DNA from: Basidiobolus meristosporus CBS 931.73
Lineage: Eukaryota > Fungi > Basidiobolomycota
Direction of reading: 5' to 3'
Assembly: GCA_002104905.1 (NCBI GenBank)
Contig: MCFE01000692.1
Span: forward strand, 1 to 44,552
Length of the DNA: 44,552 nt
A program made the position numbers and the translations under genes. Under the pieces are notes generated by a model, which saw nothing but the letters and a program-made list of their open reading frames with translations, was not told where the DNA came from and searched no databases. This document shows, one piece after another, positions 21,860-44,552 of the stretch. Within the stretch, counting starts at the first letter, position 1. Each line of letters starts with the position of its first letter.

Positions 21860-24130
21860 ATGGCAGCAGGACACGAAAGCGAGTACACTAACGAGTACGA
21901 TATCTTGTCAGTAGGCTTTGGACCAGCGGGGCTCTCCATCGCTATTGCGCTTACCGAGGCTGAAGGAGCTTCGCGAAATGGCAAACTCTCCCAGGAACAT
22001 CTACGGGTTTGCTTTATTGAGAAGCAGGATTCCTTTGTTTGGCACGAGGGAATGCTTCTGGAAGATTCCAAGATGCAAATCAGTTTCCTCAAAGACCTGG
22101 CCTCGATGCGTGACCCTAGGAGTTACTTCACCTTCCTTAATTATCTTCATCAGAAGCAGAGACTACTCTCATTTTCGAACTTGGGCTCCTTCTACCCCTA
22201 CCGCTCCGAGTATAATGACTATATGGCATGGGCTGCTTCCCATTTTGCCGATGTCTGTCATTTCGGAGAGCAAGTTGTTTCCATTGAGCCCGTCGTTACT
22301 GAGCGAACTCAGGTGGTAGAACGCTTGAAGGTTACATCAAAAAGGCTGACTGACGGAGCTAGTATTGTGCGAATCACCAAGAACGTGATTGTAGCAGTTG
22401 GAGGACAGCCTCACATCCCTGAGCTGATTGCTGAATATAATGCAAAGGACCTCCAGAACTACAATCGGATTATCCACTCCTCCCAGTATGCATATCGTGT
22501 ATCCAAGTCGCTCCCAGATAATGATTGTGCTTATTCCATTGCTGTGGTTGGAGGTGGCCAAAGTGGAGCCGAGATATTCTATGATTTGACCTCTCGTTAT
22601 CCCAATTCACGCGTGTCCCTTGTTCTACGCGATACGGCCTTACGCCCATCAGATGATAGCCCCTTCGTGAACGAAATATTCGATCCCTCATTCACTGACA
22701 CCTTCTATAACATGTCCCCTGAAAAGCGCCAGGCCACGTTGAAGCGCGAAAAAGCCACCAACTACTCAGTAGTTCGTCTCGAGCTGATTGAAAGGATATA
22801 CGGACTTTTGTACAAGCAGAAGCTTCCTGGACACTCGGAGCAACATAAGATCCTCTGCTCTCGCAAGGTTCTTTCGGTCATTCCTTCGGAGGACAGTGTT
22901 ACTTTGAAGCTGGTAAGCACCGATGAAACCGGACCAAAGGAGAACATTGGCGTTGAAACCGAGCATAAGTTTGATGCGGTCTTCTTTGCAACTGGCTACG
23001 AAAGACACCTCCACAAAGAGATTCTCGGCCCCATGTCCCCTTACTTATGCACTGATGAGAATTCCCAAATGTTGCTTCAAAGAGATTACCGACTTCAAAC
23101 CAACTCCAATTGTCGTGCTGGTATTTACCTCCAAGGGTGTTGTGAAAGTACCCATGGACTTAGCGACTCCCTTCTTTCTGTGCTCCCCATCAGAGGTGCT
23201 GAGGTCGTACAGTCTATGATCGACAATGACCCCAGCCTTCGCAGCGTAGTCTCCGCCGGATCTGCCCTGGAAAAGGAGTTATCATCCGCCTTCCAAAAGA
23301 GTGGAACCGATCGCAAGGCTGAGAAAACTACCGAGGAAAACGCACAGAATTCCACTCTTCCATCCCCACCATCCACAAGACCACTCACACCTACTGGTGA
23401 TGAGCTTTGGGAATGGGTTGAGGATGTCGACTCGGACAACGCTAGCTTCGGGTGGTTGCGCTACTCTGGCCCTTCTATGGATTTCAACAAACATATTGAT
23501 GGTCATCCTCCTCGCGTAGCCAGACCTCCAGCAGGCCAATTGCTATACCGCCGCTATATTCCCGCACTTGGGCAAAGCTTATCTCTCAGAGTGGCTAGCC
23601 TAGAGCAGGATATTGACCATTTCCACCGTTGGATGAATGACCCTCGAGTTTCTAAGTTTTGGGGTGAAGATGGCCCAATTGAGCATCAAACGAAGTATCT
23701 TTCCGGTTTGCTGGAGGATAGCCATGCCATGCCGGTGATTGGGCTCTTTGATGATGAATGCTTTGCATACTTCGAGATCTATTGGTCTAAGGAAGATAGA
23801 CTTGGTAAATACTACGAAGCTGAGAACTTCGACCGTGGAATTCACATGCTGGTTGGTGAGCAGAAGTTCCGTGGTCCCCATCGTGTGGAAGCATGGATCC
23901 CATCCTTGGCCCACTACATTCTCTTGGACGACGCACGCACTCAAAGAGTAGTTTCGGAGCCAAGAGCAGACAACGATAAAATGATTGGATATCTTCAGAA
24001 GTACGGCTTCGAGAGACACAATGATATTCAGCTACCACACAAGCGTGCCGCGTTGATGATTTTGCCTCGTGAGCATTTTGCCGAGACCAAAATCGGATCC
24101 AAACTATTCCGCTCAGCCGAGTCAAACTAG
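21860..24130 (+). CDS. Bifunctional L-ornithine N5-monooxygenase (SidA/PvdA-type) fused to an IucB/AlcB-type N-hydroxy-amino-acid acyltransferase; intronless, 756 aa
   Basis: The N-terminal part has VGFGPAGL (FAD), MQISFLKDL, VVGGGQSGAE (NADPH), RPSDDSPFVNEIF, ATNYSVV, FATGY and HGLSDSLLS. After a S/P-rich linker, the C-terminal part has RWMNDPRV..FW, YFEIYWSKED, DRGIHMLVGEQKFRG, EPRADN and PHKRA. Confidence 0.92.
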   Translation: MAAGHESEYTNEYDILSVGFGPAGLSIAIALTEAEGASRNGKLSQEHLRVCFIEKQDSFVWHEGMLLEDSKMQISFLKDLASMRDPRSYFTFLNYLHQKQRLLSFSNLGSFYPYRSEYNDYMAWAASHFADVCHFGEQVVSIEPVVTERTQVVERLKVTSKRLTDGASIVRITKNVIVAVGGQPHIPELIAEYNAKDLQNYNRIIHSSQYAYRVSKSLPDNDCAYSIAVVGGGQSGAEIFYDLTSRYPNSRVSLVLRDTALRPSDDSPFVNEIFDPSFTDTFYNMSPEKRQATLKREKATNYSVVRLELIERIYGLLYKQKLPGHSEQHKILCSRKVLSVIPSEDSVTLKLVSTDETGPKENIGVETEHKFDAVFFATGYERHLHKEILGPMSPYLCTDENSQMLLQRDYRLQTNSNCRAGIYLQGCCESTHGLSDSLLSVLPIRGAEVVQSMIDNDPSLRSVVSAGSALEKELSSAFQKSGTDRKAEKTTEENAQNSTLPSPPSTRPLTPTGDELWEWVEDVDSDNASFGWLRYSGPSMDFNKHIDGHPPRVARPPAGQLLYRRYIPALGQSLSLRVASLEQDIDHFHRWMNDPRVSKFWGEDGPIEHQTKYLSGLLEDSHAMPVIGLFDDECFAYFEIYWSKEDRLGKYYEAENFDRGIHMLVGEQKFRGPHRVEAWIPSLAHYILLDDARTQRVVSEPRADNDKMIGYLQKYGFERHNDIQLPHKRAALMILPREHFAETKIGSKLFRSAESN

Positions 24131-25043: not shown

Positions 25044-26373
25044 TCAATGTGCTGAATGGGACAGTTCGTAGCCGAAAAACCGCCAGAACTTTGCAACGCC
25101 AACGTCCTTTTTGAATATGCTAGTAATGAAGTCACCAACGACAATGAAGCCAATCTGTGCAACGCCTCCGGTACGCCCAACGCTAAACGAGATCATTTGC
25201 ATTGGGGCCCGGAATCTGCTCAGTTTCTGCATTGGCTTACCGACTTGCTGAAGAATGAGCTTGAATATATTATCTGCAGCAATTGTTCCTTGTCTATATG
25301 CAATCCCAGCCAACTTTTCACTCCACATGTTACAGACATCTCCAGCTGCAAAGATATGGGCGAGCTCGGAAGACTCCAGTTGCATAGTAGGTAGAACTTT
25401 GATGAGCCGGCTCTTCTCCTCGAGCACGCCTCCGTACTTGCCGTCCAAGTTTTTCAGGAACGAGGAATTGGGATCGGCGCCGAAGCAAAGGAACTAAATA
25501 CAAAAGAGATGGTTAGAAACAATATATGTCCCAGCATTGATAAAGCCAACAAACCTGAATATCAGTTTCAAATACCCTCCCACTAGTTGAGGTCCAGGCC
25601 CTTCTGGTGTAATGTGTCTTGGTCAAGTCCTCTTGTGAGAATATGAGGCGTTCATTAAATACCACCTCTACTCCACGTTTAGTCAAGCTCTTGTGTGCTT
25701 GAGATCTGCATCTATCCGAAACGTTTCCAGGTAGAAGTTTATCACGGCTGTGAATAAGGGTAACCTTTTTCTCCGGAAAATCATCTGCGATCTCGCCGGC
25801 AAGTTCAATTCCATTGCATCCTCCACCAACAATTAAGACATCCTTCGCTCCCTTAATTGCCTCGATTGTTTCTTCTGCAATTCGAATGCCGGTCTTCTTG
25901 TTTAATGATTGGGTATCAATGGGTGTTGGGTACGACAACCCGGAAGAGACCATCAGATAGTCAAATGCTACGGTTTCTCCAGATTCAAGGATCACCTCGT
26001 TTTTACGAACATCTTTGACAGAGGCGTTGACGACTTTGTGCTTCTTATCCTTGAAGAGCCTGTCGCGGGGGATCCACAGTTTCCTGGCAAATCCATTCTC
26101 GACCATCGCCCGGAACGCACCAATGATGAAATAGAACTCTTCTTTCTCATCGATCATCGTGATCTCCACGTTGTAGCTGCCGCATTTTTTCTCGAGCAAT
26201 TTGGCAGCACCAATTCCACCAAACGATGCACCTATGATAACGATTTTGATGGGTGCCTTCAATGCCATCAGTTCCGCGATTTTTTTGCTCGACGCTATCC
26301 AGTAATAGCTCACAACAAGTCCAACACCTGTGGCAATAGAAGCGATTATAGAGTTCATGGTTTGATGATCCAT
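25044..26373 (-). CDS. AIF/AMID (FSP1-like) FAD-dependent pyridine nucleotide-disulfide oxidoreductase with N-terminal membrane anchor
   Basis: IVIIGASFGG, DYLMVSSG, VLIVGGGCNGIELAGEI and IFAAGD. Hydrophobic N-terminus IIASIATGVGLVVSYYWI. One intron at 25494-25554. Confidence 0.88.
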
Positions 26374-28256: not shown

Positions 28257-29624
28257 TTAGAGACGGTGGATAGATTTTCCATCAACAAATACTTCGATGA
28301 TGTTGCGATCGTCGCCATTGTTAATGAATTTCTCGAAGGTGGTCTTGATATCATCATGATCGAATAGGTCAATGGGGGATCCATGGGAAAGTGGATCAAT
28401 GATCAGAGCATCGAACTGCTTCCCTACCACGAAGTTCCCGATCGAGCTCTTCATACCGAGCACATCTGCACCGCCAAGGGTAGCGAGATAGAACATCTCG
28501 GCCAGCTTGAGGTACTTGTCGTTGGGATGCTCGAAGCTACGGGCGATGGCAGAGAAGTAGCCATTGCGGATGTTGTTAAGGATGGAGGGGCTGTACCCGC
28601 CAGACACATCCGTACCAAGACCAAGCTTTTGACCCTCACTCAGCATCTGACGAATCTTTGCGATGCCGCTTCGCAGACTGAGGTTGGAGTTGGGGCAGTG
28701 AGAGATGCCTGCGTCTCTTTGCTTCAACAGCTGACGCTCAGCATCACTTGGGTACACCACGTGGGCCATGATGGTTCGGTTCGTCAACAGGCCATGGGAG
28801 TCGTACACTGAGGTGTAGTCAGGCTGATCAGGGTGGAGCTGCTTGACCCAGGCAATCTCGTCGAGGTTCTCGTCAAGATGCGACTGGATCGGGACATTGT
28901 ACTTTGTCGCGAGTGCACTCAGTCCTCTCATCAACTCACTCGTGCATGAAGGCACAAAGCGAGGGGTGACAATAGGGGCGACCCGTGAGTTCTTCTTTCC
29001 CTGGACATATTGGATGAAGGCCTCGGTGTCTTTCAGACTCTGAGCGGTGGTCTCGATCAGGTAGTCAGGGGAGTTGCGGTCCATGTTGACCTTTCCTACG
29101 AAGGCTCGCTGTCCCCTGGAGGCCACAATGTCGGCAAGCGCCTTCGAGGCCTCCAGGTGGATGGTGGCGTAGTAGCTTGCGGCCGTGGTGCCGCTTCGGA
29201 TCACTCTGTCGATAACCTTGCTGTACGCGCTCCTGGCATAGTTGGTGTTGTTGAATCGAGACTCGCGGGGGAAGGTGAAGGTGTTGAGCCAGTCCAGCAG
29301 CTGTAAATCCATCCCGGAGCCGGTGAATACATATTGTGGAGCATGGATGTGCGTGTCGATTAGTCCAGGCATGAGAAACTTCTGGTTACCTAATGGGAAG
29401 AGACTGACACCGTACTTGCGGGCAATTTGTTGTGCCTGACTCGCACTGGCATTGGTCTCCACCTGGATGATCTTTCCCGACCTATCCACAGCAATGACCC
29501 CATTGGTAGCATGCTCCAACGAGGTGACATTGACAGAATGGACAAAGTTGCCGTAGAACACAGTCTGGGCAGAAATCGACCCAATCAAGGTGGCAGATAT
29601 AATGGCAAGAGAGGTAAGATACAT
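28257..29624 (-). CDS. Guanine deaminase (amidohydrolase family) with predicted signal peptide, copy 1
   Basis: PGLIDTHIHAPQY, QSHLDEN, MAHVV, SHCPNSN, LGTDVSGG and NGDDRNI, all GuaD/Gud1/cypin-type motifs. Intronless, with N-terminus MYLTSLAIISATLIGSISA-Q. Confidence 0.9.
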   Translation of the reverse strand: MYLTSLAIISATLIGSISAQTVFYGNFVHSVNVTSLEHATNGVIAVDRSGKIIQVETNASASQAQQIARKYGVSLFPLGNQKFLMPGLIDTHIHAPQYVFTGSGMDLQLLDWLNTFTFPRESRFNNTNYARSAYSKVIDRVIRSGTTAASYYATIHLEASKALADIVASRGQRAFVGKVNMDRNSPDYLIETTAQSLKDTEAFIQYVQGKKNSRVAPIVTPRFVPSCTSELMRGLSALATKYNVPIQSHLDENLDEIAWVKQLHPDQPDYTSVYDSHGLLTNRTIMAHVVYPSDAERQLLKQRDAGISHCPNSNLSLRSGIAKIRQMLSEGQKLGLGTDVSGGYSPSILNNIRNGYFSAIARSFEHPNDKYLKLAEMFYLATLGGADVLGMKSSIGNFVVGKQFDALIIDPLSHGSPIDLFDHDDIKTTFEKFINNGDDRNIIEVFVDGKSIHRL

Positions 29625-30598
29625 AGCTAGATGTTGTTAATACCTCTACAGCGAGTTAAGCTTGTTTATATACTTCTATGGAGCACGAGATAGTTATAAT
29701 CTTCTCAAATGTGTAAGGATAGGCTTCACACATTTGATATTTTCAGTGTTCCCACATGGTAATGTAGATTTCCGTTTGAGGGTACATTTGGGCTACATGC
29801 TCTTAGTTTTCACATAGAGTTGGCTTCTGCATAAAAAGTGACGCTATGAACGAATAATATCCGTGAGGGGTTTTGGTAACACGGGAAATCATTGGTAACC
29901 GGACATCTACTTGGCTGAATTTCACTATCGTTTTCAAATCCTATAGAAAACAATACAATAGCGTGATGCGATTATCCAAATTCTCCAAGTATTTCAAGCC
30001 ATTAATAAGTTAAAAACACAATTAGAACCAATGAGGAACAATATCTCGAGATTGTTCAATGGTCTATTGGGAGTCATATAATCTTAACCTGGGAATCCCT
30101 TCTAAAATGATGTAATTGCACATTTGCGAACTCTACACCACACCTCACCACACGGAGGTTTTCGATTTGGAATCAAAGACAACTCTACTGCTGATAGCAT
30201 TAACTCATTCTAATTCAAGCTTGGACCGATGATTAACGAGCGATGTTGTACCGAATCTATGGTAGGTTTACGAAATTTGTGGCAGCGAATGCTCATCAAA
30301 GTGAATAAACTTATCTACTACAGAAAAATGGACCAATAACAGGAATATTTTCAAATCACCTCCCAAAAACACATTTTGATCAGATGAGCATATAAGTACC
30401 TTCCGTTCACAAGTAGTAGCATGGAATATTCCAAGAACTTGAGTGGATCCTGTAGTTATATCGGCAATCATTAATATGGGGACTAATGCGGTAAGATTTT
30501 CCCAAAGATTATAACGCCTGACCTCAAACGGTATAATATAAATACTTTGCATCTGCCATAGGCACTCAAGTATCAACCTAAGAATTGTTCCACTAACA

Positions 30599-31966
30599 AT
30601 GTACCTTACGTCTCTTGCCATTATATCTGCCACCTTGATTGGGTCGATTTCTGCCCAGACTGTGTTCTACGGCAACTTTGTCCATTCTGTCAATGTCACC
30701 TCGTTGGAGCATGCTACCAATGGGGTCATTGCTGTGGATAGGTCGGGAAAGATCATCCAGGTGGAGACCAATGCCAGTGCGAGTCAGGCACAACAAATTG
30801 CCCGCAAGTACGGTGTCAGTCTCTTCCCATTAGGTAACCAGAAGTTTCTCATGCCTGGACTAATCGACACGCACATCCATGCTCCACAATATGTATTCAC
30901 CGGCTCCGGGATGGATTTACAGCTGCTGGACTGGCTCAACACCTTCACCTTCCCCCGCGAGTCTCGATTCAACAACACCAACTATGCCAGGAGCGCGTAC
31001 AGCAAGGTTATCGACAGAGTGATCCGAAGCGGCACCACGGCCGCAAGCTACTACGCCACCATCCACCTGGAGGCCTCGAAGGCGCTTGCCGACATTGTGG
31101 CCTCCAGGGGACAGCGAGCCTTCGTAGGAAAGGTCAACATGGACCGCAACTCCCCTGACTACCTGATCGAGACCACCGCTCAGAGTCTGAAAGACACCGA
31201 GGCCTTCATCCAATATGTCCAGGGAAAGAAGAACTCACGGGTCGCCCCTATTGTCACCCCTCGCTTTGTGCCTTCATGCACGAGTGAGTTGATGAGAGGA
31301 CTGAGTGCACTCGCGACAAAGTACAATGTCCCGATCCAGTCGCATCTTGACGAGAACCTCGACGAGATTGCCTGGGTCAAGCAGCTCCACCCTGATCAGC
31401 CTGACTACACCTCAGTGTACGACTCCCATGGCCTGTTGACGAACCGAACCATCATGGCCCACGTGGTGTACCCAAGTGATGCTGAGCGTCAGCTGTTGAA
31501 GCAAAGAGGCGCAGGCATCTCTCACTGCCCCAACTCCAACCTCAGTCTGCGAAGCGGCATCGCAAAGATTCGTCAGATGCTGAGTGAGGGTCAAAAGCTT
31601 GGTCTTGGTACGGATGTGTCTGGCGGGTACAGCCCCTCCATCCTTAACAACATCCGCAATGGCTACTTCTCTGCCATCGCCCGTAGCTTCGAGCATCCCG
31701 ACGACAAGTACCTCAAGCTGGCCGAGATGTTCTATCTCGCTACCCTTGGCGGTGCAGATGTGCTCGGTATGAAGAGCTCGATCGGGAACTTCGTGGTAGG
31801 GAAGCAGTTCGATGCTCTGATCATTGATCCACTTTCCCATGGATCCCCCATTGACCTATTCGATCATGATGATATCAAGACCACCTTCGAGAAATTCATT
31901 AACAATGGCGACGATCGCAACATCATCGAAGTATTCGTTGATGGAAGGTCCATTCACCGGATCTAA
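30599..31966 (+). CDS. Guanine deaminase with predicted signal peptide, copy 2 (inverted near-identical duplicate)
   Basis: Same motifs as copy 1. The two 455-aa translations differ at only four positions. Confidence 0.9.
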   Translation: MYLTSLAIISATLIGSISAQTVFYGNFVHSVNVTSLEHATNGVIAVDRSGKIIQVETNASASQAQQIARKYGVSLFPLGNQKFLMPGLIDTHIHAPQYVFTGSGMDLQLLDWLNTFTFPRESRFNNTNYARSAYSKVIDRVIRSGTTAASYYATIHLEASKALADIVASRGQRAFVGKVNMDRNSPDYLIETTAQSLKDTEAFIQYVQGKKNSRVAPIVTPRFVPSCTSELMRGLSALATKYNVPIQSHLDENLDEIAWVKQLHPDQPDYTSVYDSHGLLTNRTIMAHVVYPSDAERQLLKQRGAGISHCPNSNLSLRSGIAKIRQMLSEGQKLGLGTDVSGGYSPSILNNIRNGYFSAIARSFEHPDDKYLKLAEMFYLATLGGADVLGMKSSIGNFVVGKQFDALIIDPLSHGSPIDLFDHDDIKTTFEKFINNGDDRNIIEVFVDGRSIHRI

Positions 31967-34900: not shown

Positions 34901-35720
34901 GTTGGTCATTAGACTTTGCCGTTTGTCTATTGGTGAAGCGGCAATTGTCCTTTCTGTTGGCTGATCTGATCTCGATCCGTATGCTGGCTACTCTATCATT
35001 CATCACCGACACTTCTCATTACTAACCTCTGATGATCGTATCGACAACGTCGAAAGTCACAACTGTGTAGTCGGTTTTTCATAGAATGATCAAATACTCG
35101 ATTCTACATATGTTCCTAGCGTGATCAGAATAAATAATCAGTAATATATTATCATTCCCTATCACTCGATCATCTATCTTTCTTTACGCCAATTTCGAAG
35201 CAAATATTGCCGTAGACGTAGTTGTACTGGTATTTATTGAACACTGCCCTTCATAAGCACTATTGGATATCGACACATACTGCTTTGATGTATGCGAAAG
35301 TGATTACAGGAATCGTCTGTGGAAGTACATATTAACTGGTGTTCTGTCTTATTTGCCCGCTTCCACTATTTATGGAATATAGTAGTTCTCATGCTTATCG
35401 GATGTGAAGAAACGATACCGTTATGGTCAAGCACAACTACAGGTAGCTCACATGAGTCTGATTAGAGTCATACCAGTATAGAGTATGGATTCCTGATGTT
35501 AGCAAGTAGGTCCCTAGCCTCCAACCTGATCAAGTGAACCCGTTGGGTAGTATGGTGTAGCACAAGCATATCTAATGGATATACCTTCCATAACGGTAGA
35601 CTCAGCTCTGTACCAAAATGGTTATATTTGCGTTGTACCACCAGCATGTTGTGTGCAATTCCTCATATAAATAAGCCTGCCTGTAATCCAAGATTGACCA
35701 TCTCACAATCTCTATATACA

Positions 35721-37022
35721 ATGAGGCTTAATTCTCCAATGATGCAGGTCATATTAGTTGGCTTTGCATGTTTCTGCTGCCCGGGTATGTACAATGTAAT
35801 CAACAGTCTAGGTGCCGGAGGACAGATGGACGACAACACCACTAAGAATGGTAATGTTGCTCTTTACGCTTGCTTCTCTGTATTTGGTGTGTTCGGTGGG
35901 GCCATTCACAATGTCCTCGGTGGGCGTTGGACTATGGTTAGCGGCGGTCTCACGTACGCACTGTACTCTGGTTCCCTTGTATATTATAGCAACACCAAAG
36001 AGCCCACCTTCGTCATTATTGCTAGTGCAATTCTAGGTATTGGTGCTGGTATGTTCTGGACTGCCCAAGGTACAATTATGATGTCCTATCCATCCGAGAA
36101 TCAGAAAGGCCGCGCAGTCGGAATCTTCTGGATTATTTTCAACATGGGCGCCGTACTCGGTTCTTTCATTCCCTTCGGCCTCAACTTCCATTCCTCAGCA
36201 GGACAAGTGAGCACCGCTACCTACTATGTATTGATGGCACTTATGGTTATTGGTGCTCTGCTTGGCTTGGGCCTCATTCCCCCCGAGAGGGTAGTACGCG
36301 AGGATGGTTCCCGTGTGCAAGTCTCCAAATTTGAAAACGTCGGTGGTGAGATCATTGAGATCCTGAAACTATTCAAGAACAAGAACATGCTCTTGCTCCT
36401 CCCCTTGTGCGTCACTTCCAACTGGTTCTACTCTTATCAGTTCGGTGCTGTAAATGGTGTTCTTTTTAATGTTCGTACCCGCTCATTCAACAGTGCCTTC
36501 TACTGGGGTGCTCAAATGATTGGCGCCTATGGGGTGGGTCTGTTGCTCGATAATCCCAAGCTTCAGCGTCGCACTCGTGCCTTATACGGACTTGCTCTGG
36601 TAACCGTACTAACAATGATCATATGGGGCGGTGGTCTTGGTCTTCAAGTACAATATACTCGGGAAGATCATCCTAAAGACATCGATTTCATCAACGGCCC
36701 AGGATGGGGCGGCAAGTTTGCCTTATATCTGTTCTACGGTTTTCTGGATGCCGTTCTACAAACTTATGCTTATTGGTTAATGGGTGCTCTCTCTAATGAC
36801 AGTCACGTCCTTGCTCGTTATGCTGGATACTACAAAGGACTCCAATCTGCTGGCGCGGCTATTGCCTGGGATATTGATGCTAAGAATACTCCTTTCTTGA
36901 CTCAGCTGATCATCAACTGGGTACTGTGCACAGCCTCCCTTCCTTTTGCTTACATTGTAGCCAGAGGTGTCAAGGATACCTCAGAGGAGGATGGTGAGAA
37001 GGTCGAGATGGAAAAGTCTTAA
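35721..37022 (+). CDS. UNC-93-like / DUF895 MFS-type membrane protein
   Basis: QVILVGFACFCCPGMYNVINSLGAGG, GLTYALYSG, GAGMFWTAQG and ARYAGYYKGLQSAGAA, with multiple TM segments. Intronless. First ATG at 35721. Confidence 0.85.
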   Translation: MRLNSPMMQVILVGFACFCCPGMYNVINSLGAGGQMDDNTTKNGNVALYACFSVFGVFGGAIHNVLGGRWTMVSGGLTYALYSGSLVYYSNTKEPTFVIIASAILGIGAGMFWTAQGTIMMSYPSENQKGRAVGIFWIIFNMGAVLGSFIPFGLNFHSSAGQVSTATYYVLMALMVIGALLGLGLIPPERVVREDGSRVQVSKFENVGGEIIEILKLFKNKNMLLLLPLCVTSNWFYSYQFGAVNGVLFNVRTRSFNSAFYWGAQMIGAYGVGLLLDNPKLQRRTRALYGLALVTVLTMIIWGGGLGLQVQYTREDHPKDIDFINGPGWGGKFALYLFYGFLDAVLQTYAYWLMGALSNDSHVLARYAGYYKGLQSAGAAIAWDIDAKNTPFLTQLIINWVLCTASLPFAYIVARGVKDTSEEDGEKVEMEKS

Positions 37023-37459
37023 CCAAATATGTTACCGCATGAATGTCATGCCCATTTTATTTAATGCAATTTAATAAACCAAAGTTATTTAGTAGTTATG
37101 AGTATTCAACTCAAGTACAAGCACCTTTCTTTTTCAAGTATAGTGTAGAGGGAATCTAGTGAATGCCGTGGTTTGGAATAGCTACATTGCATGTGTAATA
37201 AAGGTCACATGTCCATATTACCCCGGAGAAACAAAACGGAAAACCTGTTCATCACATTTGCATTCAGAAATTCGGGTGGTCAGTCAACTCCTATTGTTGC
37301 GATTGGAATGATTCACCTACTGAACCTGAAGTAGAAAGACGAGATATCATTTAGCATTAGGATCGCTTGGTTTGAGAAGGGAGTGCTGCGAAGTATTTCA
37401 CGTGAGCAATGCAAAAATACGTACTGAGGAGAGTAAACAGTGGAATAACAATTCGAAAT

Positions 37460-38091
37460 TCTGGATTTGCTCTATCTGGCTTATGGTATATATCATAGTC
37501 AGCATTGCTCCTTTTGAAACTCAAAGATTCCAAATCAGAATCTAACATGCAATTCCAGGCTATTGGTGATTGTTTGAGTATAAATAAAGACTTTTTAAGC
37601 TTGCAGACCAGATGGAGGTTATCTTGAGCAACAAAACCATCCGGCTGGTCCATACACATGTCCTCATCAAGTTCTCCATTCAAAAATGCAGTTTTTACAT
37701 CCATTTGATGTATAAAAAACTTATGTTTGGCTGCAATAGCCAATATTAATCTAATGGAATTAAACTTGGCTGCTGGTGCAAAGATCTCAGTATAGTCAAG
37801 TCCTTTTGTTTGAGAGTATCCTTTGGCCACAAGTCTTGCTTTGTATTCTTCAATTGAACCATCTGCATCCAATTGATTTCTGGTTGATTGGTAATTTGAC
37901 TAAGTCCCAAGTTTGATTTTCCATCAAGGCCTGATATTCCTCAGTCATTGCAGATCTCCAAAATTTCAACTGATGGCTATTTAGGGCCTATTTTACAGTC
38001 TGGGGTTCATCAATATGAACTGAATAGGCATAGGCTAAGTTTGTACCCTCATTGATATAGTAATTTGGGCTATTTCTTGTCTAATTGGATC
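37460..38091 (-). mobile_element. Copia RT fragment related to the 6013-9577 element, truncated at a telomeric junction
   Basis: YKARLVAKGYSQ, QMDVKTAFLNG and KLKKSL. The DNA aligns by eye to ~7295-7950 and ends abruptly before accTTAGGG. Confidence 0.9.
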
Positions 38092-38100
38092 ACCTTAGGG

Positions 38101-39243
38101 GGGAGACAGTTGCCAACAGGTGAAATCTTTATTTCAGTTGAAACAAAGAAGCCAGCACTACTGTTGTAGCTTTGATACAAGAGTGTGTAGCTGCGGGGAA
38201 TTTGTAGGTAAGTTAATAAGAAGTGATGATAGTTCTTCAGTGCTCAAGACACTGTTCAGTGGGAAGGGGGGTAGCAAGAGAGGTAAGAATGACTTGTGAA
38301 CAACATTAATGAGGGGAATGTGATAAGGATTGATATTCATCATAAAGGGAGTGTGCTGCTGCAGATATTGCTGCCAAAGGTCTGTCAAGTATTTCAGGTA
38401 GGCCAGCTTGGGTTTTTCTAACTGCAGAATATAGTGTGCAAACTTCTTAACTTCAGGATCTCCAAGTATAGTTCTCCAGCAGGAGCCAGGTGTAGTGTGA
38501 TGTGTTCTCTTCCAGGCCTTAATCAGTGGGTTGTTGCAGTGGTGAAGTCTGAGATATAATCTGGTTCTAAGGTAGAGAAGTCTGATCTTATAGGGCATAA
38601 ACCCAAAAGCACCAAGAATAGCATGTCTGTAGGGGCATTCAGGCAAATGAGGCACCAAGGAGGTAATGCACCATACTGCAAACTTGTCAAGATTAGTGCA
38701 GTCTCTAGAAGTAAGAGAGAGAAGTGGTAAGCCAGACTCCAGGACAGGGAAGACAAACTGCTTGAGTAGAAGGAGGCAGCTGGGAGCTGAAGTTGTTGGA
38801 GGAGTAACAGCCAGTAGCTTGTGGAGTGCCTGTCTTGCCAGGATAATTCTCTTCTTCAGGTGTGCTCCAGAGTCTAGTCCAGTAGGAAGGAAAGGAAAGC
38901 CAAGATATGTAGCAGAAACCTGAGCAGGTAGAGTGGAGTTCTCCAAGTTGATGGGAGAGCCCAAAGGTACTGTCTTTGCAATGGAAAGCTGGAGATTATT
39001 CTTCTGCAGATACTGGTGGATGGTCTGGGAGTCTTGTTGCACATTGGAGGAGGATATTCTGATGTCATCAGCAAAGAGAGTAACCAGGCAGTCAGCTGAG
39101 AGTCTTGGGAAATCATTCAGGAAGATGGCAAACAGTATAGGACCAAGCACAGAGCCTTGAATCACTCCATTAGGAGCTGAGAACACAGCTGATTGCTCAC
39201 TTGGGTGAAGAATCCTTGCTTGTGGATCTAGAAACAGAGACCT
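38101..39243 (-). mobile_element. 5'-truncated copy of the telomeric non-LTR retrotransposon (3' ~1.15 kb)
   Basis: Highly similar to 40666-41808. Encodes GVIQGSVLGP and LFADDI through the stop. Preceded by TTAGGG and followed by TTAGGTTAGGG. Confidence 0.93.
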
Positions 39244-39254
39244 TTAGGTTAGGG

Positions 39255-39748
39255 GAGGAAAGTCACCAAGTGGTGAAATCTTTATTTACTTATGACAAGT
39301 ATACAAAGAAGCCAAGTTAATCTGAAGTAATTCCTAGAAAGCTAGGTCTGAGAGATATCTACCGGGTAAGCCAGGCCTGAGAGTTGAGAAGCTGAGTGGT
39401 ACTATATTTCCTAGTTAGCTAGGTCTGAGAGAGGTTTCCTGGAAAGCCAGGCCTGAGAAGTGAGAATCTGAGTATATCTGAGGTGAGTTGTACTGATTTG
39501 CGGTAGCATGTTTGTGGCCAGAATGGCCAGTAGACTGGGGGAACTGAGGGGTATTTCTGGGCGATCACTGGCCAAATTTACTAGGCAAATCTGACCAATT
39601 AGCATTTCAAGGATTTCAGCCAATCAGAGCCTTTACTTTGCCCGATGGTTAATCAAGCCATCTCCCAATGAGCACACGTCAATTTATTGATCAAATTTTG
39701 CTGGATCCAGGATTTGAACCCACAACCATGGGTATGGGAGGGTTAGGG
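39255..39748 (-). mobile_element. Telomeric SINE-like element, copy 1 (ends at its internal telomeric repeat)
   Basis: Homologous to 40132-40627. B-box GGTTCAAATCC at 39710-39720 (minus) and 3' hairpin at 39263-39276. Confidence 0.8.
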
Positions 39749-39782
39749 GAGGGAAAGTCACCAAGGTAGGTGAAATCTTTAT
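39749..39782 (-). mobile_element. 34-bp 3'-terminal stub of the SINE/LINE (hairpin only)
   Basis: gagggaaagtcaccaaggtaggtgaaatctttat, directly capped by TTAGGG repeats. Confidence 0.7.
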
Positions 39783-39824
39783 AGGGTTAGGGTTAGGGTT
39801 AGGGTTAGGGTTAGGGGGGGGGGG
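39782..39824 (+). repeat. Interstitial telomeric tract, ~6 TTAGGG units plus a G run
   Basis: Read directly. Confidence 0.95.
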
Positions 39825-40116
39825 AGGAAAGTCACCAAGTGGTGAAATCTTTATTTACTTATGACAAGTATCTAAAGAAGCCAAGTTAATCTGAAGTAAT
39901 TCCTAGAAAGCTAGGTCTGAGAGATATCTTCCTGGTAAGCCAGGTCTGAGAGTTGAGAAGCTGATTGGTACTATATTTCCTAGTTAGCTAGGTCTGAGAG
40001 AGGTTTCCTGGAAAGCCAGGCCTGAGAAGTGAGAATCTGAATATATCTGAGCTAAGTTATACTGGTTTGCGGTAGCTGAATTGTGGGCGGAATGGCCAGT
40101 AGACTAGGGGAACTGA
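39817..40116 (-). mobile_element. Telomeric SINE-like element, copy 2 (5'-truncated, ~300 bp)
   Basis: Homologous to the first 300 bp of 40132-40651 and capped by GGGTTAGGGTTAGGG (40117-40131). Confidence 0.8.
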
Positions 40117-40131
40117 GGGTTAGGGTTAGGG

Positions 40132-40651
40132 GGGAGGAAAGTCACCAAGTGGTGAAATCTTTATTTACTTATGACAAGTATCTAAAGAAGCCAAGTTAAT
40201 CTGAAGTTATTCCTAGAAAGCTAGGTCTGAGAGATATCTTCCTGGTAAGCCAGGTCTGAGAGTTGAGAAGCTGAGTGGTACTATATTTCCTAGTTAGCTA
40301 GGTCTGAGAGAGGTTTCCTGGAAAGCCAGGCCTGAGAAGTGAGAATCTGAATATATCTGAGCTAAGGTATACTGGTTTGCAGTAGCTGAATTGTGGCCGG
40401 AATGGCCAGTAGACTGGGGGAACTGAGATGAATTTCTGGGCAATCACTGGCCAAATTTACTAGGCAAATCTGACCAATTAGCATTTCAAGGATTTCAGCC
40501 AATCAGAGCCTCTACTTTGCCCGATGGTTGATCAAGCCATCTCCCAATGAGCACACATCAATTTATTGATCAAATTTTGCTGGATCCAGGATTTGAACCC
40601 ACAACCATGGCTATGGAAGGGTTAGGGATAACCACAAGGCTAAGTGTTCTT
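40132..40651 (-). mobile_element. Telomeric SINE-like element, apparently full length (~520 bp), with tRNA-like Pol III head
   Basis: The minus strand begins aagaacactTAGCCTTGTGGTtatCCCTAACCCttccatagccatggttgtgGGTTCAAATCCtgg. The A-box-like motif is at 40631-40642 and the B-box at 40589-40599, at tRNA-like spacing. The 3' end is shared with the LINE. Flanked by TTAGGG repeats on both sides, with no long ORF. Confidence 0.75.
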
Positions 40652-40722
40652 GGTTAGGGTTAGGGGGGAGACAGTCACCAACAGGTGAAATCTTTATTTC
40701 AGTTGAAACAAAGAAGCCAGCG

Positions 40723-43491
40723 CTACTGTTGTAGCTTTGATACAAGAGTGTATAGCTGAGGGGAATTTGTAGGTAAGTTAATAAGAAGTGATGATAGTTC
40801 TTCAGTGCTCAAGACACTGTTCAGTGGGAAGGGGGGTAGCAAGAGAGGTAAGAATGACTTGTGAACAACATTAATGAGGGGAATGTGATAAGGATTGATA
40901 TTCATCATAAAGGGAGTGTGCTGCTGCAGATATTGCTGCCAAAGGTCTGTCAAGTACTTCAGGTAGGCCAGCTTGGGTTTTTCTGACTGCAGAATATAGT
41001 GAGCAAACTTCTTGACTTCAGGATCTCCAAGTATAGTTCTCCAGCAGGAGTCAGGTGTTGTGTGGTGTGTTCTCTTCCAGGCCTTAATCAGTGGGTTGTT
41101 GCAGTTGTGAAGTCTGAGGTATAATCTGGTTCTAAGGTAGAGAAGTCTGATTTTATAGGGCATAAACCCAAAAGCACCAAGAATAGCATGTCTGTAGGGG
41201 CATTCAGGCAAATGAGGCACCAAGGAGGTAATGCACCATACTGCAAACTTGTCAAGCTTAGTGCAGTCTCTAGAAGTAAGAGAGAGAAGTGGTAAGCCAA
41301 ATTCCAGGACAGGGAGGACAAACTGCTTGAGTAGAAGGAGGCAGCTGGGAGCTGAAGTTGTAGGAGGAGTAACAGCCAGTAGCTTGTGGAGTGCCTGTCT
41401 TGCCAGGATAATTCTCTTCTTCAGGTGTGCTCCAGAGTCTAGTCCAGTAGGAAGGAAAGGAAAGCCAAGATATGTAGCAGAAACCTGAGCAGGTAGAGTG
41501 GAGTTCTCCAAGTTGATGGGAGAGCCCAAAGGTACTGTCTTTGCAATGGAAAGCTGGAGATTATTCTTCTGCAGATACTGGTGGATGGTCTGGGAGTCTT
41601 GTTGCACATTGGAGGAGGATATTCTGATGTCATCAGCAAAGAGAGTAACCAGGCAGTCAGCTGAGAGTCTTGGGAAATTATTCAGGAAGATGGCAAACAG
41701 TATAGGACCAAGCACAGAGCCTTGAACCACTCCATTAGGAACTGAGAAAACAGCTGATTGCTCACTTGGGTGCAGAATTCTTGCTTGTGGATCCAGAAAC
41801 AGAGACCTGACAAGGAGGGTGAGAGAGGTACTGGAGAAGCATTGCAACTTGGACCAAAGCAGATTTCTGTCAACTGAATCAAAGGCCTTAGTAATATCAA
41901 ACAGAACAGAGGGATACTTGCACTGGAGAGAGTGATCTTGGCTAAGTATGACTGCATATTCCAAGGAGAGGCCAGGAACAAAGCCAAACTGTGCAGGATG
42001 AAACTTGAGAGAGTCAGAGTAGAGCTCCTGAGCAAGCAGAAGCTCAAACACCTTTCTGCAGGTGGGCAGCAGAGATATTGGCCTGTAGGAGCTAGGATCC
42101 AGGTGCTTTCCTTTACCCTTGTACAGTGGCAGAACATTTGCAAAGGACCATTCCTCAGGAGTAGAAAGCTGGGCTGAGCATTGCTGAAACAGTGGAAGCA
42201 GAAGTGCCGACATGGCCTTGGTACTAGTCTTCAGAAGCTCATAGGAGATTGTGTCCACACCTGGAGCAGTAGAGTTGGGAAGCCTCTTGAGCACATTATG
42301 GATTCTCCTTTGATCAAGTGCAAGTGGGATGGGCAGAGTCTTGAAGTCAGGATGAAAGCCAGGAGTTGAGTACTGCTTTGTAGAGAAGAAGATGTTAGCC
42401 AGCTGTTCTGTTGAAGGTAACTTCCTGGAAGAGGGCCTCATTGCCCTGTAGAGTCTTGATACTGTTCTTGTTATAGAGTTGGAAGATTGCAGAGGCAAGG
42501 AACTCATAATATGATCCCAGAGCTGAGTATGCAGAGTGTGGTGAATTGCCTTGGAGTGGTGTATTGCTGTCAGGAGGAGTTTCTCTGTTTTTGGGTTAGG
42601 GAAGCTCAGGTAGCTTTGTTGCAGGGCTGAAACAATGGATTCCCATTTTCTTGAGGTACCAGCAGTAGTCTTGCATGGCAGTGAGAGGGAGGCAGACACC
42701 AGAATAAGATGCTTCACAAAGAGCCAGGCAAAGTTGAGATCATCTGGCTGAGAAAGTAGCAAACTGGCAAGCTTCAAGTAGTTCCCAAAGTCTTTCTTCT
42801 GATTCTTGGTAGCTTTGTGGGTGAGCACAGTAAGTTTTGGCAGCTTCTTCTTCACAACTGGTTGCATAGAAAGGGACCAGGCTGGGTGGTCAGAGGCTCT
42901 CAAGGATCCTAGCTCAGCTCCAGAGAATTGCTTAACTTCATTCACAAAGTAGAGGGCAGCAGCAGAAGGGCAGATCCAGTCAACACATCTTTTCTCAGAT
43001 TGAGCACCTAGTGCTAGCAGGTGGCTTTCTCTCAGGAAGTTCAGTAGGAATGTAGACCTTGGCTTCATTCTTGCAGTCAGAGTAGTCTTGTTCTCAGGAT
43101 GGGGAATGTTGAGATCTCCAAGCAAGATAACAGGTGTTGATATAGATTGTTGGTATTGCTGAACCTTTTGGCATATAACTTGCACTTCCTGAAGGGCTAG
43201 ACTTGGAGGCAGATAGCAGAGCACCAGACTGATAGTTGGCAACTGGAGAGCAGCACAGTAAGGGGAGTAAAGAGGAACACAGAGCTGAGGAGTATTGATG
43301 GTAGAAGAGATGAAGCAGATAGAGGAGGTATTCTTTGTTCTAGGAGTAGAAAAGCAATATAGATTAGTCAAAAGTATAGAGGGTAGCTGGACATCAATCA
43401 AACACAGGAGGGAAAATCTTGAAAGAAGTCTCTCTAGAGTTGGTCTTGATGGCTGTATGCTGTTGCAGTTAAGCAACAGAACTTCAGGTAG
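40723..43491 (-). CDS. LINE ORF2: apurinic-like endonuclease plus reverse transcriptase, uninterrupted
   Basis: EN motifs are LLLNCNSI, CYLPP, ILLGDLN, VDW and SDH. RT motifs are APGVDTI, YRPISLL, QFGF, FDITKAFDSV, GVVQGSVLGP, LFADDI and YLG. There is no ATG before the EN GDLN motif. Confidence 0.93.
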   Translation of the reverse strand, partial: LPEVLLLNCNSIQPSRPTLERLLSRFSLLCLIDVQLPSILLTNLYCFSTPRTKNTSSICFISSTINTPQLCVPLYSPYCAALQLPTISLVLCYLPPSLALQEVQVICQKVQQYQQSISTPVILLGDLNIPHPENKTTLTARMKPRSTFLLNFLRESHLLALGAQSEKRCVDWICPSAAALYFVNEVKQFSGAELGSLRASDHPAWSLSMQPVVKKKLPKLTVLTHKATKNQKKDFGNYLKLASLLLSQPDDLNFAWLFVKHLILVSASLSLPCKTTAGTSRKWESIVSALQQSYLSFPNPKTEKLLLTAIHHSKAIHHTLHTQLWDHIMSSLPLQSSNSITRTVSRLYRAMRPSSRKLPSTEQLANIFFSTKQYSTPGFHPDFKTLPIPLALDQRRIHNVLKRLPNSTAPGVDTISYELLKTSTKAMSALLLPLFQQCSAQLSTPEEWSFANVLPLYKGKGKHLDPSSYRPISLLPTCRKVFELLLAQELYSDSLKFHPAQFGFVPGLSLEYAVILSQDHSLQCKYPSVLFDITKAFDSVDRNLLWSKLQCFSSTSLTLLVRSLFLDPQARILHPSEQSAVFSVPNGVVQGSVLGPILFAIFLNNFPRLSADCLVTLFADDIRISSSNVQQDSQTIHQYLQKNNLQLSIAKTVPLGSPINLENSTLPAQVSATYLGFPFLPTGLDSGAHLKKRIILARQALHKLLAVTPPTTSAPSCLLLLKQFVLPVLEFGLPLLSLTSRDCTKLDKFAVWCITSLVPHLPECPYRHAILGAFGFMPYKIRLLYLRTRLYLRLHNCNNPLIKAWKRTHHTTPDSCWRTILGDPEVKKFAHYILQSEKPKLAYLKYLTDLWQQYLQQHTPFMMNINPYHIPLINVVHKSFLPLLLPPFPLNSVLSTEELSSLLINLPTNSPQLYTLVSKLQQ

Positions 43492-44360
43492 TCAGGCAGA
43501 GGTTGTAGCTTCTTCAGAGGCAGCATTAACAATGTGACCTGCAGAGTCCCAGAGCTCTTCAAATGGTGCATCACTTAAGTCAGCAAGGAGGGAAATGGCA
43601 TGATTCTTGAGGAAGTATGCCACATCATAGGAGGGGGCTTGTCTCTTGATGGCAGCAAAGAAAGACAGAATGGCAACATGGGCTGGAGGCTTGTTGAACA
43701 GTAGAGAGTCAGAGGATTCAGATTCTTCAGGCACTATCTTGAAGTCAGTTTTCAGCCAGTTAAGGTTCTTCTCCACAAAGGCAACAAATGGGTCAGCAAT
43801 GTTTTGGTCTAGGATAACCTCCAGAATCTTCCCTTTTCTCCAGGCCAGGTTGACAATTCTTGAGAGCTGAATATTGCATGCCTTGAGTGCTTTCCTGATG
43901 TTGGAAATGGGGGTCCAAGGAACTTGCTTCAAGTACACCACAGTCCAGGTAGAAGCTGGTGGTAGGTTTGCTGGGGGCTTGTAAGTCCTTCTGTGTTGCA
44001 ATGGAGCTGCAGTAGTCAGATTGGAGTCCACATTCTCAGTAGAAGGTTTTCTTGATGTGTCTTGCTGAATAGTACTGGAGCTGGATGTGCTGATAATTCT
44101 TGCTAGAACCTTGCCTGCATAAGTCTGAGGTATAGCTGAGGTGACTGTAGAGGTGGTGGCAGCTGGTGCAGGTGGAGAGGCAGAGACTGAAGCAGGAACT
44201 GAGGTCACCTGGGAGAAGGCAGTAGAAGCAGATTTTCTGGGAGGAACAGAGTTCACTATCCAGTTGTTCTGTAAAACACTGGAGTAGCTTTTCTGTGGAA
44301 CAGGATCTTGCTCTTGAACAGGAACAGAAGCAGGAGGCTGGGGCTGAGCAGTAGTGGTAA
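43492..44360 (-). CDS. LINE ORF1 (gag-like), 5'-truncated
   Basis: The frame stays open from the telomere junction (LTTTAQPQPPASVPVQEQDPVPQKSYSSVLQNNWIVNSVPP...) to TGA at 43494-43492. It is P/S/T-rich, then has a folded segment (WTVVYLKQVPWTPISNIRKAL). Assignment rests on position rather than a recognised domain. Confidence 0.75.
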
Positions 44361-44552
44361 GGGTTAGGGTTAGGGTTAGGGTTAGGGTTAGGGTTAGGGT
44401 TAGGGTTAGGGTTAGGGTTAGGGTTAGGGTTAGGGTTAGGGTTAGGGTTAGGGTTAGGGTTAGGGTTAGGGTTAGGGTTAGGGTTAGGGTTAGGGTTAGG
44501 GTTAGGGTTAGGGTTAGGGTTAGGGTTAGGGTTAGGGTTAGGTTAGGTTAGG
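44361..44552 (+). repeat. Terminal telomere (TTAGGG)n, ~32 units, G-strand pointing to the window end
   Basis: Read directly. The last few units are TTAGG. Confidence 0.99.

What the first reader, a model, noticed from the sequence alone, without database searches (positions are those of the whole stretch)
28257..31966. Guanine deaminase with a signal peptide: an apparently secreted purine-scavenging enzyme
Seen: both copies start MYLTSLAIISATLIGSISA|QTVFYG, a hydrophobic core with a small-residue cleavage site directly before the first catalytic-domain strand. They carry N-glycosylation sequons (NVT, NAS, NNT, NRT, NLS) and intact metal ligands. Known: GuaD/Gud1/cypin enzymes are cytosolic. 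Inference: extracellular deamination releases ammonium from poorly soluble guanine, which is abundant in arachnid excreta and animal reflective tissues. This would be a niche-specific nitrogen-acquisition trait, amplified by duplication.
Basis: partly seen in the sequence, partly recalled or inferred. Interest (0 to 1): 0.7.

Follow-up and report, generated by a model that had tools for sequence, protein, structure and literature searches.

The report
Guanine deaminase carrying a secretion signal
A frog- and lizard-gut fungus (Basidiobolus) keeps, besides its ordinary cell-internal guanine deaminase, a separate conserved set of copies that begin with an export signal, two of them here near a chromosome end, so it probably breaks down guanine outside the cytosol; this has not been tested at the bench.

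Summary
Two intronless 455-aa genes (28257-29624 minus, 30599-31966 plus) lie head to head. They score above the curated cut-off for guanine deaminase, and all metal and catalytic residues are intact. Both begin with an uncharged 19-residue hydrophobic leader placed directly before the first strand of the fold.

Several in-silico results support a signal peptide:
- All seven members of a Basidiobolus-only clade encode the leader, across three genomes. Three published gene models had missed it.
- The sister Basidiobolus clade, which sits in conserved synteny, has no leader and is presumably cytosolic.
- The leader clade keeps only the 2 family-wide cysteines. None of 100 other homologues has so few (median 8).
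- It has three or four clade-specific conserved N-glycosylation sequons.
- The leader is disordered in the AlphaFold model.
- The leader's sequence changes fast but it stays hydrophobic.

The pair is an older inverted duplicate homogenised by gene conversion. It lies about 12 kb from a terminal TTAGGG array.

Secretion itself, the final destination (medium, wall or vacuole), the substrate and the ecological story remain untested. No SignalP run and no RNA or proteome data were available. I found no paper describing an exported guanine deaminase. The scan already reported the same kind of gene on another piece of this genome (s1-239732).

The parts
30599..31966 (+). Guanine deaminase copy B, 455 aa, intronless, with the N-terminal leader
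   Evidence: ORF. TIGR02967 guanine deaminase scores 445.7 bits against a cut-off of 375.4. Pfam Amidohydro_1 E 1e-62. Human GDA 2uz9 E 1e-121 over residues 21-452.
28257..29624 (-). Guanine deaminase copy A, 455 aa. It differs from copy B at 4 residues: G304D, D368N, R450K and I455L.
   Evidence: Position 304 is a variable column in the family, so the change is probably harmless.
30599..30655 (+). Leader (putative signal peptide) of copy B, codons 1-19. The predicted cut lies between A19 and Q20.
   Evidence: There are no K/R/D/E residues in the first 18, and the mean Kyte-Doolittle value for residues 3-17 is 1.92. A cut after residue 19 fits the (-3,-1) rule in every leader whose junction with the fold could be read, and in L001 as far as the frameshift allows. 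pLDDT is below 50 for residues 1-16 and the fold starts at residue 19. Human GDA aligns only from residue 21.
29568..29624 (-). Leader (putative signal peptide) of copy A, codons 1-19
   Evidence: The peptide is identical to copy B. The two nucleotide differences, at codons 2 and 4, are both synonymous.
29625..30598 (.). Shared 974-bp divergent promoter region. It is not palindromic and the two halves are unrelated.
   Evidence: The best local alignment of the two upstream halves scores no better than shuffles. Only one inverted pair was found, and it ends 6 nt upstream of each ATG.
30537..30542 (+). TATA-like box 62 nt upstream of the copy B start codon
   Evidence: All seven leader-clade genes have TATA[AT]A 44-68 nt upstream of the leader ATG. 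This supports that ATG as the first in a short 5'UTR.
29665..29672 (-). TATA-like box 46-48 nt upstream of the copy A start codon

Best explanation
Each gene encodes a zinc-dependent guanine deaminase of the eukaryotic amidohydrolase type. Its first 19 residues act as a cleavable ER signal peptide. The enzyme therefore enters the secretory pathway, is N-glycosylated and, lacking any retention or sorting signal, is most likely released to the cell wall or the medium. There it would convert guanine to xanthine plus ammonium. A Basidiobolus-specific duplication of the cytosolic gene produced this form. The new copy then gained the leader, lost its free cysteines and gained surface sequons, and it has since multiplied into dispersed copies. 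The two copies here are an old inverted pair near a chromosome end, kept nearly identical by gene conversion. Shown: family assignment, active-site integrity, the leader's features and conservation, the compositional signatures and the phylogeny. Inferred: cleavage, glycosylation, export, the extracellular destination and use of the products.
For: Enzyme identity:
- The protein scores 445.7 bits on the TIGR02967 equivalog, against a cut-off of 375.4.
- It matches human GDA at E 1e-121.
- H92, H94, H249, E252, H288 and D339 are invariant, and Q97, L109, L110, W112 and L113 are also invariant. The last four match human L99, L100, W102 and L103, which PMC3360617 and PMC11694556 name as contacting the base or lying beside the active site.

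The leader:
- It is a 19-residue uncharged run at the extreme N-terminus, among the longest in 123 homologues.
- A cut after residue 19 fits the (-3,-1) rule.
- All seven clade members encode it, including upstream of three mis-modelled B. meristosporus genes.
- The sister clade P0007-P0009 lacks it, with no hidden upstream leader.
- The AlphaFold model (pTM 0.88) leaves residues 1-16 below pLDDT 50, and the fold starts at residue 19.
- The leader's pN is 0.449 against 0.125 for the body, with synonymous sites saturated. This is fast sequence change with hydrophobicity kept, over a body under purifying selection.

Signatures of a secretory route:
- The clade has 2 cysteines, against 4-18 (median 8) in 100 other homologues, none of which has 2 or fewer. 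Five cysteines kept by the cytosolic sister clade have been replaced.
- Sequons at 32, 58, 125 and 282 are kept in 3-4 of 4 intact clade members, against 1, 7, 1 and 14 of 100 elsewhere. They fall in loops or at the ends of secondary-structure elements in the model.
- There is no KDEL/HDEL, no C-terminal hydrophobic tail and no propeptide.

Start codon: a TATA-like box lies 44-68 nt upstream of the leader ATG in all seven genes, and there is no in-frame upstream ATG.

Origin: the leader clade has 100/100 support, is sister to the Basidiobolus cytosolic clade (98/95) and is nested within fungi.

Precedent: ADGF/ADA2 are secreted purine deaminases that exist beside a cytosolic ADA (abstract of PMC10358891).
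Against: - No trained predictor (SignalP, DeepLoc) was on hand.
- No RNA run was listed, so the transcript start is not confirmed by reads.
- No secretome or proteome data for this protein were found.
- The n-region of this subclade has no basic residue, and the h-region contains several Ser/Thr/Gly residues, so hydrophobicity is only moderate.
- A signal peptide proves entry into the ER, not release. ADA2, the closest analogue, is also lysosomal (PMC12060026).
- Sequon totals (4-6) overlap those of cytosolic homologues (0-6), so only their positions are clade-specific.
- Two B. meristosporus copies carry frameshifts between the leader and the body. These may be pseudogenes or long-read errors.
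- No purine transporter or other purine gene lies beside the pair.
Confidence: 0.6

Rival explanations
1. The leader is a true signal peptide, but the enzyme stays inside the endomembrane system. It would act in the vacuole (the fungal lysosome) on guanine released by RNA turnover or endocytosed material, and would not be released.
For: All the secretory-route evidence fits this equally well: the leader, the cysteine loss and the sequons. ADA2, a signal-peptide-bearing purine deaminase, is now reported to be lysosomal as well as secreted (PMC12060026 abstract).
Against: There is no propeptide or other recognisable vacuolar sorting element, because the leader abuts the first strand of the fold. 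From general knowledge of yeast, soluble proteins in the secretory pathway without a sorting signal are released by default.
Confidence: 0.2
2. The hydrophobic N-terminus is an uncleaved signal anchor. The enzyme would then be a type II membrane protein with its catalytic domain facing outward or into the lumen.
For: The uncharged stretch is 17-19 residues long, near the lower limit for a membrane span. There is no basic n-region in this subclade.
Against: The stretch is rich in Ser, Thr, Gly and Ala. It ends in a conserved small-x-small motif (I-S-A before Q, or A-A-A/A-T-A before G) in every leader read through the junction. No spacer separates it from the first beta-strand, so an uncleaved anchor would pin the fold against the membrane.
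Confidence: 0.07
3. The leader has no targeting role and the enzyme is cytosolic. The N-terminus would be a lineage-specific appendage, or the real start or exon structure would differ.
For: There is no experimental or read-level support for the start codon. Published gene models of three relatives omitted the leader.
Against: The leader is kept in frame and hydrophobic at seven loci in three genomes, even though synonymous sites are saturated. TATA boxes sit at a fixed distance from its ATG. Two of the three omissions are explained by frameshifts in a long-read assembly and the third by the choice of a downstream Met. A cytosolic reading does not explain the loss of five cysteines or the clade-specific sequons.
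Confidence: 0.08
4. The exported enzyme has shifted substrate and acts on something other than guanine, such as another aminopurine, a pterin, 8-oxoguanine or a triazine-like compound.
For: The stem branch of the clade is long (0.47 changes per column). Next to the catalytic Glu252, Cys251 of the sister clade has become Asp in all clade members. The neighbouring families 8-oxoguanine deaminase and TRZ/ATZ hydrolase also give weak matches.
Against: The score is above the trusted cut-off only for the guanine deaminase equivalog. The other families score 100-240 bits against cut-offs of 520-780. The base-contact residues are invariant (with PMC3360617).
Confidence: 0.12

Closest known systems
Eukaryotic guanine deaminase of the amidohydrolase superfamily (human GDA/cypin, yeast Gud1; EC 3.5.4.3; TIGR02967)
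   Same: Same fold and family. Identity to fungal and animal enzymes is about 50%. It has the HxH, His and Asp zinc site, the catalytic Glu and the same base-contact residues.
   Different: The known members are cytosolic and start a few residues before the first strand. This clade adds a 19-24 residue hydrophobic leader, keeps only 2 cysteines and has clade-specific sequons.
Basidiobolus leaderless guanine deaminase paralogues (P0007, P0008, P0009)
   Same: They are the sister clade in the tree (98/95 support), from the same genus, intronless and 53-57% identical.
   Different: They have no leader, carry 7-8 cysteines and sit in conserved synteny (kinase, isochorismatase, GDA, kinase). The leader-bearing copies are dispersed, and here subtelomeric.
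ADGF/ADA2 (CECR1) secreted adenosine deaminases
   Same: They work alike in principle: a zinc purine deaminase with a signal peptide, existing beside a cytosolic counterpart and acting on extracellular purines (PMC10358891 abstract).
   Different: They belong to a different family (adenosine deaminase with an extra N-terminal domain) and use a different substrate. Pfam finds only Amidohydro_1/3 in the protein here. The two arose independently.

Membership tests
Guanine deaminase, amidohydrolase type (TIGR02967, EC 3.5.4.3) | Whole-protein score above the curated equivalog cut-off | tested here: met
   445.7 bits against a cut-off of 375.4, covering profile positions 2-401 of 401.
Guanine deaminase, amidohydrolase type (TIGR02967, EC 3.5.4.3) | Zinc ligands (HxH, His, Asp) and the catalytic Glu/His | tested here: met
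   H92, H94, H249, E252, H288 and D339 are invariant columns in both copies. They align with the matching residues of human GDA.
Guanine deaminase, amidohydrolase type (TIGR02967, EC 3.5.4.3) | Residues that contact the guanine base (human L99, W102, L103; also Q87, R213, F214 from my own knowledge) | tested here: met
   L109, W112, L113 and Q97 are invariant. R222 and F223 are nearly invariant. The residue names for the hydrophobic patch come from PMC3360617 and PMC11694556.
Guanine deaminase, amidohydrolase type (TIGR02967, EC 3.5.4.3) | Catalyses guanine to xanthine plus ammonia | not testable with these tools
   This needs an enzyme assay.
Eukaryotic Sec-type cleavable signal peptide | N-terminal uncharged hydrophobic core of at least 7-15 residues | tested here: met
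   The uncharged, non-polar-interrupted run is 19 residues long. The best 10-residue Kyte-Doolittle mean is 2.28, against a median of 1.36 in 123 homologues.
Eukaryotic Sec-type cleavable signal peptide | c-region with small residues at -1 and -3 before the mature protein | tested here: met
   A cut after residue 19 fits the rule in the leaders examined. Here the motif is I-S-A before Q.
Eukaryotic Sec-type cleavable signal peptide | Not part of the mature fold | tested here: met
   pLDDT is below 50 for residues 1-16 and the first strand starts at residue 19. Homologues align from residue 21 onward.
Eukaryotic Sec-type cleavable signal peptide | Called by a trained predictor (SignalP, Phobius, DeepLoc) | not tested
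Eukaryotic Sec-type cleavable signal peptide | Cleavage and export observed | not testable with these tools
   No RNA run was listed. No proteome data were found.
ADGF/ADA2 secreted adenosine deaminases | Adenosine deaminase catalytic domain plus the ADGF N-terminal domain | tested here: not met
   Pfam finds only Amidohydro_1 and Amidohydro_3. The resemblance is an analogy in mode of action, not membership.

The most novel reading that the evidence does not exclude
Basidiobolus runs the first steps of purine catabolism outside the cell. Exported guanine deaminases, together with the other signal-peptide deaminases and the xanthine/urate permease that the scan noted elsewhere in this genome, would let it mine nearly insoluble guanine from arthropod excreta or prey and from herptile tissues or gut contents. 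The guanine would be converted to xanthine, which a permease can import, and ammonium would be released. That would be an extracellular nucleobase-scavenging pathway not described in fungi.
Probability: 0.3. Interest if true: 0.7.

Novelty: new variant of a known kind. Interest (0 to 1): 0.55.

Why it matters
Guanine deaminases are treated as cytosolic salvage and catabolic enzymes. A conserved, multiplied, export-tagged clade in one animal-associated fungal genus would be the guanine counterpart of the ADA1/ADA2 split. It would point to extracellular use of guanine, a nitrogen-rich (5 N per molecule) but almost insoluble compound. From general knowledge, guanine is common in arachnid excreta and in the reflective cells of fish, amphibians and reptiles, which are the organisms Basidiobolus cycles through. 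The case is also a clean natural example of how a cytosolic enzyme is refitted for the secretory route: gain a leader, lose free cysteines, gain sequons. And it yields a glycosylation-tolerant, cysteine-poor guanine deaminase that may be easy to produce as a secreted enzyme. The claim is directly testable with culture filtrate.

Tried and rejected
- RNA evidence: the look-up of sequencing runs listed no run, so read laying was not used and the transcript start is unconfirmed.
- Horizontal transfer: rejected. The clade is nested in fungi and is sister to the genus's own cytosolic clade.
- Retrocopy origin: no support, because the cytosolic paralogues are intronless too.
- Recent tandem or segmental duplication, or an assembly foldback artefact: rejected. 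Identity stops 6 nt before each ATG and at each stop codon, the flanks and spacer are unrelated, and 9 of the 11 differences lie in the first 12 and last 30 nt of the CDS. This is the pattern of gene conversion between old duplicates.
- Mitochondrial presequence: rejected. This leader has no Arg or Lys and is not amphipathic.
- ER retention or a GPI anchor: no KDEL/HDEL and no C-terminal hydrophobic tail.
- Peroxisomal PTS1: the clade's conserved C-terminus, I-H-(R/K)-(L/I), resembles but does not match the canonical (S/A/C)-(K/R/H)-(L/M), and it would conflict with an N-terminal signal peptide. I noted it but did not adopt it.
- Nitrogen-type GATA sites and UaY-type TCGG-N6-CCGA sites in the promoters: no enrichment and no sites.
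- A shared promoter word, CCACACGGAG: found, but weak once the window site is counted once.
- Conserved gene neighbours of the leader-clade copies: none found.
- Solvent exposure of the sequon asparagines and the distance between the two cysteines: could not be computed, because model coordinates are not exposed.
- Literature: eight searches found no exported guanine deaminase and only the ADGF/ADA2 analogy.
Full report
WHAT IS THERE

The window holds two 455-codon ORFs without introns, at 28257-29624 (minus) and 30599-31966 (plus). They are transcribed divergently from a 974-bp spacer. They form a 1374-nt inverted repeat that is 99% complementary. The repeat ends 6 nt upstream of each ATG and exactly at each stop codon. 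The copies differ at 11 of 1368 nt, giving four amino-acid changes: G304D, D368N, R450K and I455L. Nine of the 11 differences lie in the first 12 or last 30 nt of the CDS. The upstream and downstream flanks are no more alike than shuffled sequence. This is the signature of an older inverted duplicate whose coding region is homogenised by gene conversion. It does not look like a fresh duplication or a foldback assembly artefact. There is no third copy or fragment in the window.

ORGANISM AND PLACE

The closest proteins are all from Basidiobolus ranarum and B. meristosporus, at 74-90% identity. The next best hits, at 53-57%, are a second set of Basidiobolus proteins, followed by Mortierella, Mucorales, chytrids and animals at about 50%. 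At DNA level the relatives match only within the CDS, at 73-81%. I therefore call the source a Basidiobolus species without naming it.

The window ends in a terminal TTAGGG array from 44364 onward. This array is preceded by LINE-type and copia-type reverse-transcriptase ORFs. The only ordinary gene between the deaminase pair and that debris is an UNC-93/MFS-type transporter ORF at 35628-37022. The pair is thus subtelomeric, about 12 kb from the chromosome end.

ENZYME IDENTITY

- Pfam gives Amidohydro_1 at E 1e-62.
- NCBIfam's guanine deaminase equivalog TIGR02967 scores 445.7 bits against a cut-off of 375.4. All other amidohydrolase families fall far below their cut-offs.
- Human guanine deaminase (2uz9, 4aql) aligns over residues 21-452 at E 1e-121.
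- In an alignment with 14 homologues, the zinc and catalytic residues H92, H94, H249, E252, H288 and D339 are invariant. So are Q97, L109, L110, W112 and L113.
- The last four correspond to human L99, L100, W102 and L103. PMC3360617 and PMC11694556 name these as the hydrophobic patch contacting the base, or as residues beside the active site.
- The AlphaFold model is confident, with pTM 0.88 and mean pLDDT 86.

Guanine is therefore the best-supported substrate. The one clade-specific change next to the catalytic Glu (Cys251 to Asp) and the long stem branch leave some room for a shift.

THE LEADER

Residues 1-19 carry no charged residue and form one of the longest uncharged hydrophobic N-terminal runs among 123 homologues. 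They end in I-S-A before Q20, which fits the (-3,-1) rule. They sit directly before the first beta-strand. The model leaves residues 1-16 below pLDDT 50, and the fold begins at residue 19. No in-frame ATG lies upstream.

The decisive evidence is comparative.
- B. ranarum P0002 and P0004 carry the same kind of leader.
- Three B. meristosporus gene models appeared to lack it, but all three encode it just upstream. P0003 was simply started at a downstream Met.
- In P0005 and P0006 a frameshift separates the leader from the annotated body. This could be a pseudogene or an error in a long-read assembly; I cannot tell which.
- All seven loci therefore encode a leader.
- A TATA-like box lies 44-68 nt upstream of the leader's ATG in all seven genes.
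- Between the two subclades, synonymous sites are saturated (pS 0.81). The enzyme body has pN 0.125 and the leader 0.449. The body is under strong purifying selection, while the leader changes fast yet keeps its hydrophobic character, as signal peptides do.

THE LEADERLESS SISTER CLADE

P0007, P0008 and P0009 have polar N-termini and no hidden upstream leader. They are also intronless. They sit in conserved synteny between kinase and isochorismatase genes. The leader-bearing copies share no neighbours.

The tree recovers the leader clade at 100/100 support. It is sister to the leaderless Basidiobolus clade at 98/95, and the two together are nested among fungi. Both subclades of the leader clade occur in both sister species. 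The leader therefore arose once, after a genus-level duplication of the vertical gene and before those species split. Horizontal transfer is not involved.

SIGNATURES OF THE SECRETORY ROUTE IN THE MATURE PROTEIN

- The four intact leader-clade proteins have exactly two cysteines, C227 and C310. These are the two that 97-100% of all homologues keep.
- The 100 other homologues have 4-18 cysteines (median 8), and none has two or fewer.
- Five cysteines retained by the leaderless sister clade have been replaced, at positions 150, 160, 251, 289 and 322.
- Sequons at N32, N58, N125 and N282 are kept in 3-4 of 4 clade members, but occur at those columns in only 1, 7, 1 and 14 of 100 other homologues. 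The fifth, N314, occurs in 57 of 100 and is uninformative.
- The four informative sites fall in turns or at the ends of secondary-structure elements in the model.
- The protein has no KDEL/HDEL, no C-terminal hydrophobic tail and no propeptide.

From general knowledge of fungal sorting, a soluble protein with none of these is released by default. That is why I put wall or medium ahead of the vacuole.

WHAT IS NOT SHOWN

No trained signal-peptide predictor was available. No RNA run was listed. No proteomic evidence was found. Cleavage, glycosylation, export, destination and substrate are all inferences. Nothing here tests it, however. The promoters show no enrichment of nitrogen-type GATA sites.

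COMPARISON WITH WHAT IS KNOWN

By every testable criterion the protein is a member of the guanine deaminase family, and within it a variant with a new predicted location. Eight literature searches found no exported guanine deaminase. One survey lists guanine deaminase among families expanded in early-diverging fungi, but it says nothing of secretion (PMC8778642).

The closest analogue in mode of action is the ADGF/ADA2 family of secreted adenosine deaminases. That family is unrelated in sequence at family level. It also brings the caveat that ADA2 is reported to be lysosomal as well.

EARLIER NOTES OF THE SCAN

The scan already reported a leader-bearing guanine deaminase on another piece of this genome (s1-239732) with the same reading. 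I repeated the tests independently here, and they agree. A note on a xanthine/urate permease beside four signal-peptide deaminases (s1-197436) would strengthen the pathway idea, but I did not check it.

VERDICT

The signal-peptide reading is well supported in silico, by several lines of evidence that do not depend on one another. Export and ecology are open. My confidence in the full best explanation is 0.6. This is a new variant of a known kind, of moderate interest, and cheap to test at the bench.

Noticed in passing
window 44364-44552 and 37357-44360: The window ends in a terminal TTAGGG array (34 overlapping 12-mer hits, none expected by chance). The array is preceded by LINE-type RT ORFs (38158-39186, 40723-43476) and a copia-type RT fragment (37357-37872). 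The deaminase pair is therefore subtelomeric.
   Followed up: partly
window 35628-37022 (+): A 464-aa ORF with UNC-93 and MFS_1 domains. It is the last ordinary gene before the telomeric retroelements and the nearest neighbour of the deaminase pair. Its substrate is unknown, and I did not test for a link to purine uptake.
   Followed up: no
window 30148-30159; L005 about -493 and L001 about -377 from the leader ATG: The word CCACACGGAG(G/A)T occurs once in the whole window, inside the deaminase intergenic region, and upstream of two leader-clade genes in other genomes. It occurs nowhere else in 72 kb of loci. Window and L001 share about 22 of 28 positions around it. With the window site counted once the statistics are weak (shuffles reach it in about 7%).
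   Followed up: partly
L001 5940-6010; L002 5906-6000; L003 5980-6000: Three public B. meristosporus gene models (P0005, P0006, P0003) miss the leader. P0003 starts at a downstream Met. P0005 and P0006 have a frameshift between leader and body, which could be a pseudogene or a long-read indel error. P0006 is also cut by a contig end.
   Followed up: partly
L006 4590-5132 (-); L006-L008: The leaderless guanine deaminase paralogues sit in conserved synteny (kinase, isochorismatase, GDA, kinase). In L006 a CMP/dCMP-type deaminase gene lies directly downstream.
   Followed up: no
P0110 (Planoprotostelium fungivorum), residues 1-27: Its guanine deaminase has a 27-residue N-terminal extension with a hydrophobic core (the best Kyte-Doolittle 10-mer in the set, 2.68) ahead of the first strand. 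This may be an independent case of a targeted guanine deaminase. P0053 and P0105 also have long N-terminal extensions, of a different, Arg-rich kind.
   Followed up: no
window proteins, residue 251 and C-terminus 452-455: Two clade-specific features are unexplained. Cys251, next to the catalytic Glu252, is Asp in all leader-clade members. And all of them end in I-H-(R/K)-(L/I), a loosely PTS1-like tripeptide.
   Followed up: no
window 21860-24130 (+) and 25513-26373 (-): A 756-aa ORF fuses an ornithine/lysine N-monooxygenase domain to a GNAT acyltransferase domain (siderophore-type). Next to it is a pyridine nucleotide-disulphide oxidoreductase ORF. Others in the scan have already noted both.
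   Followed up: no
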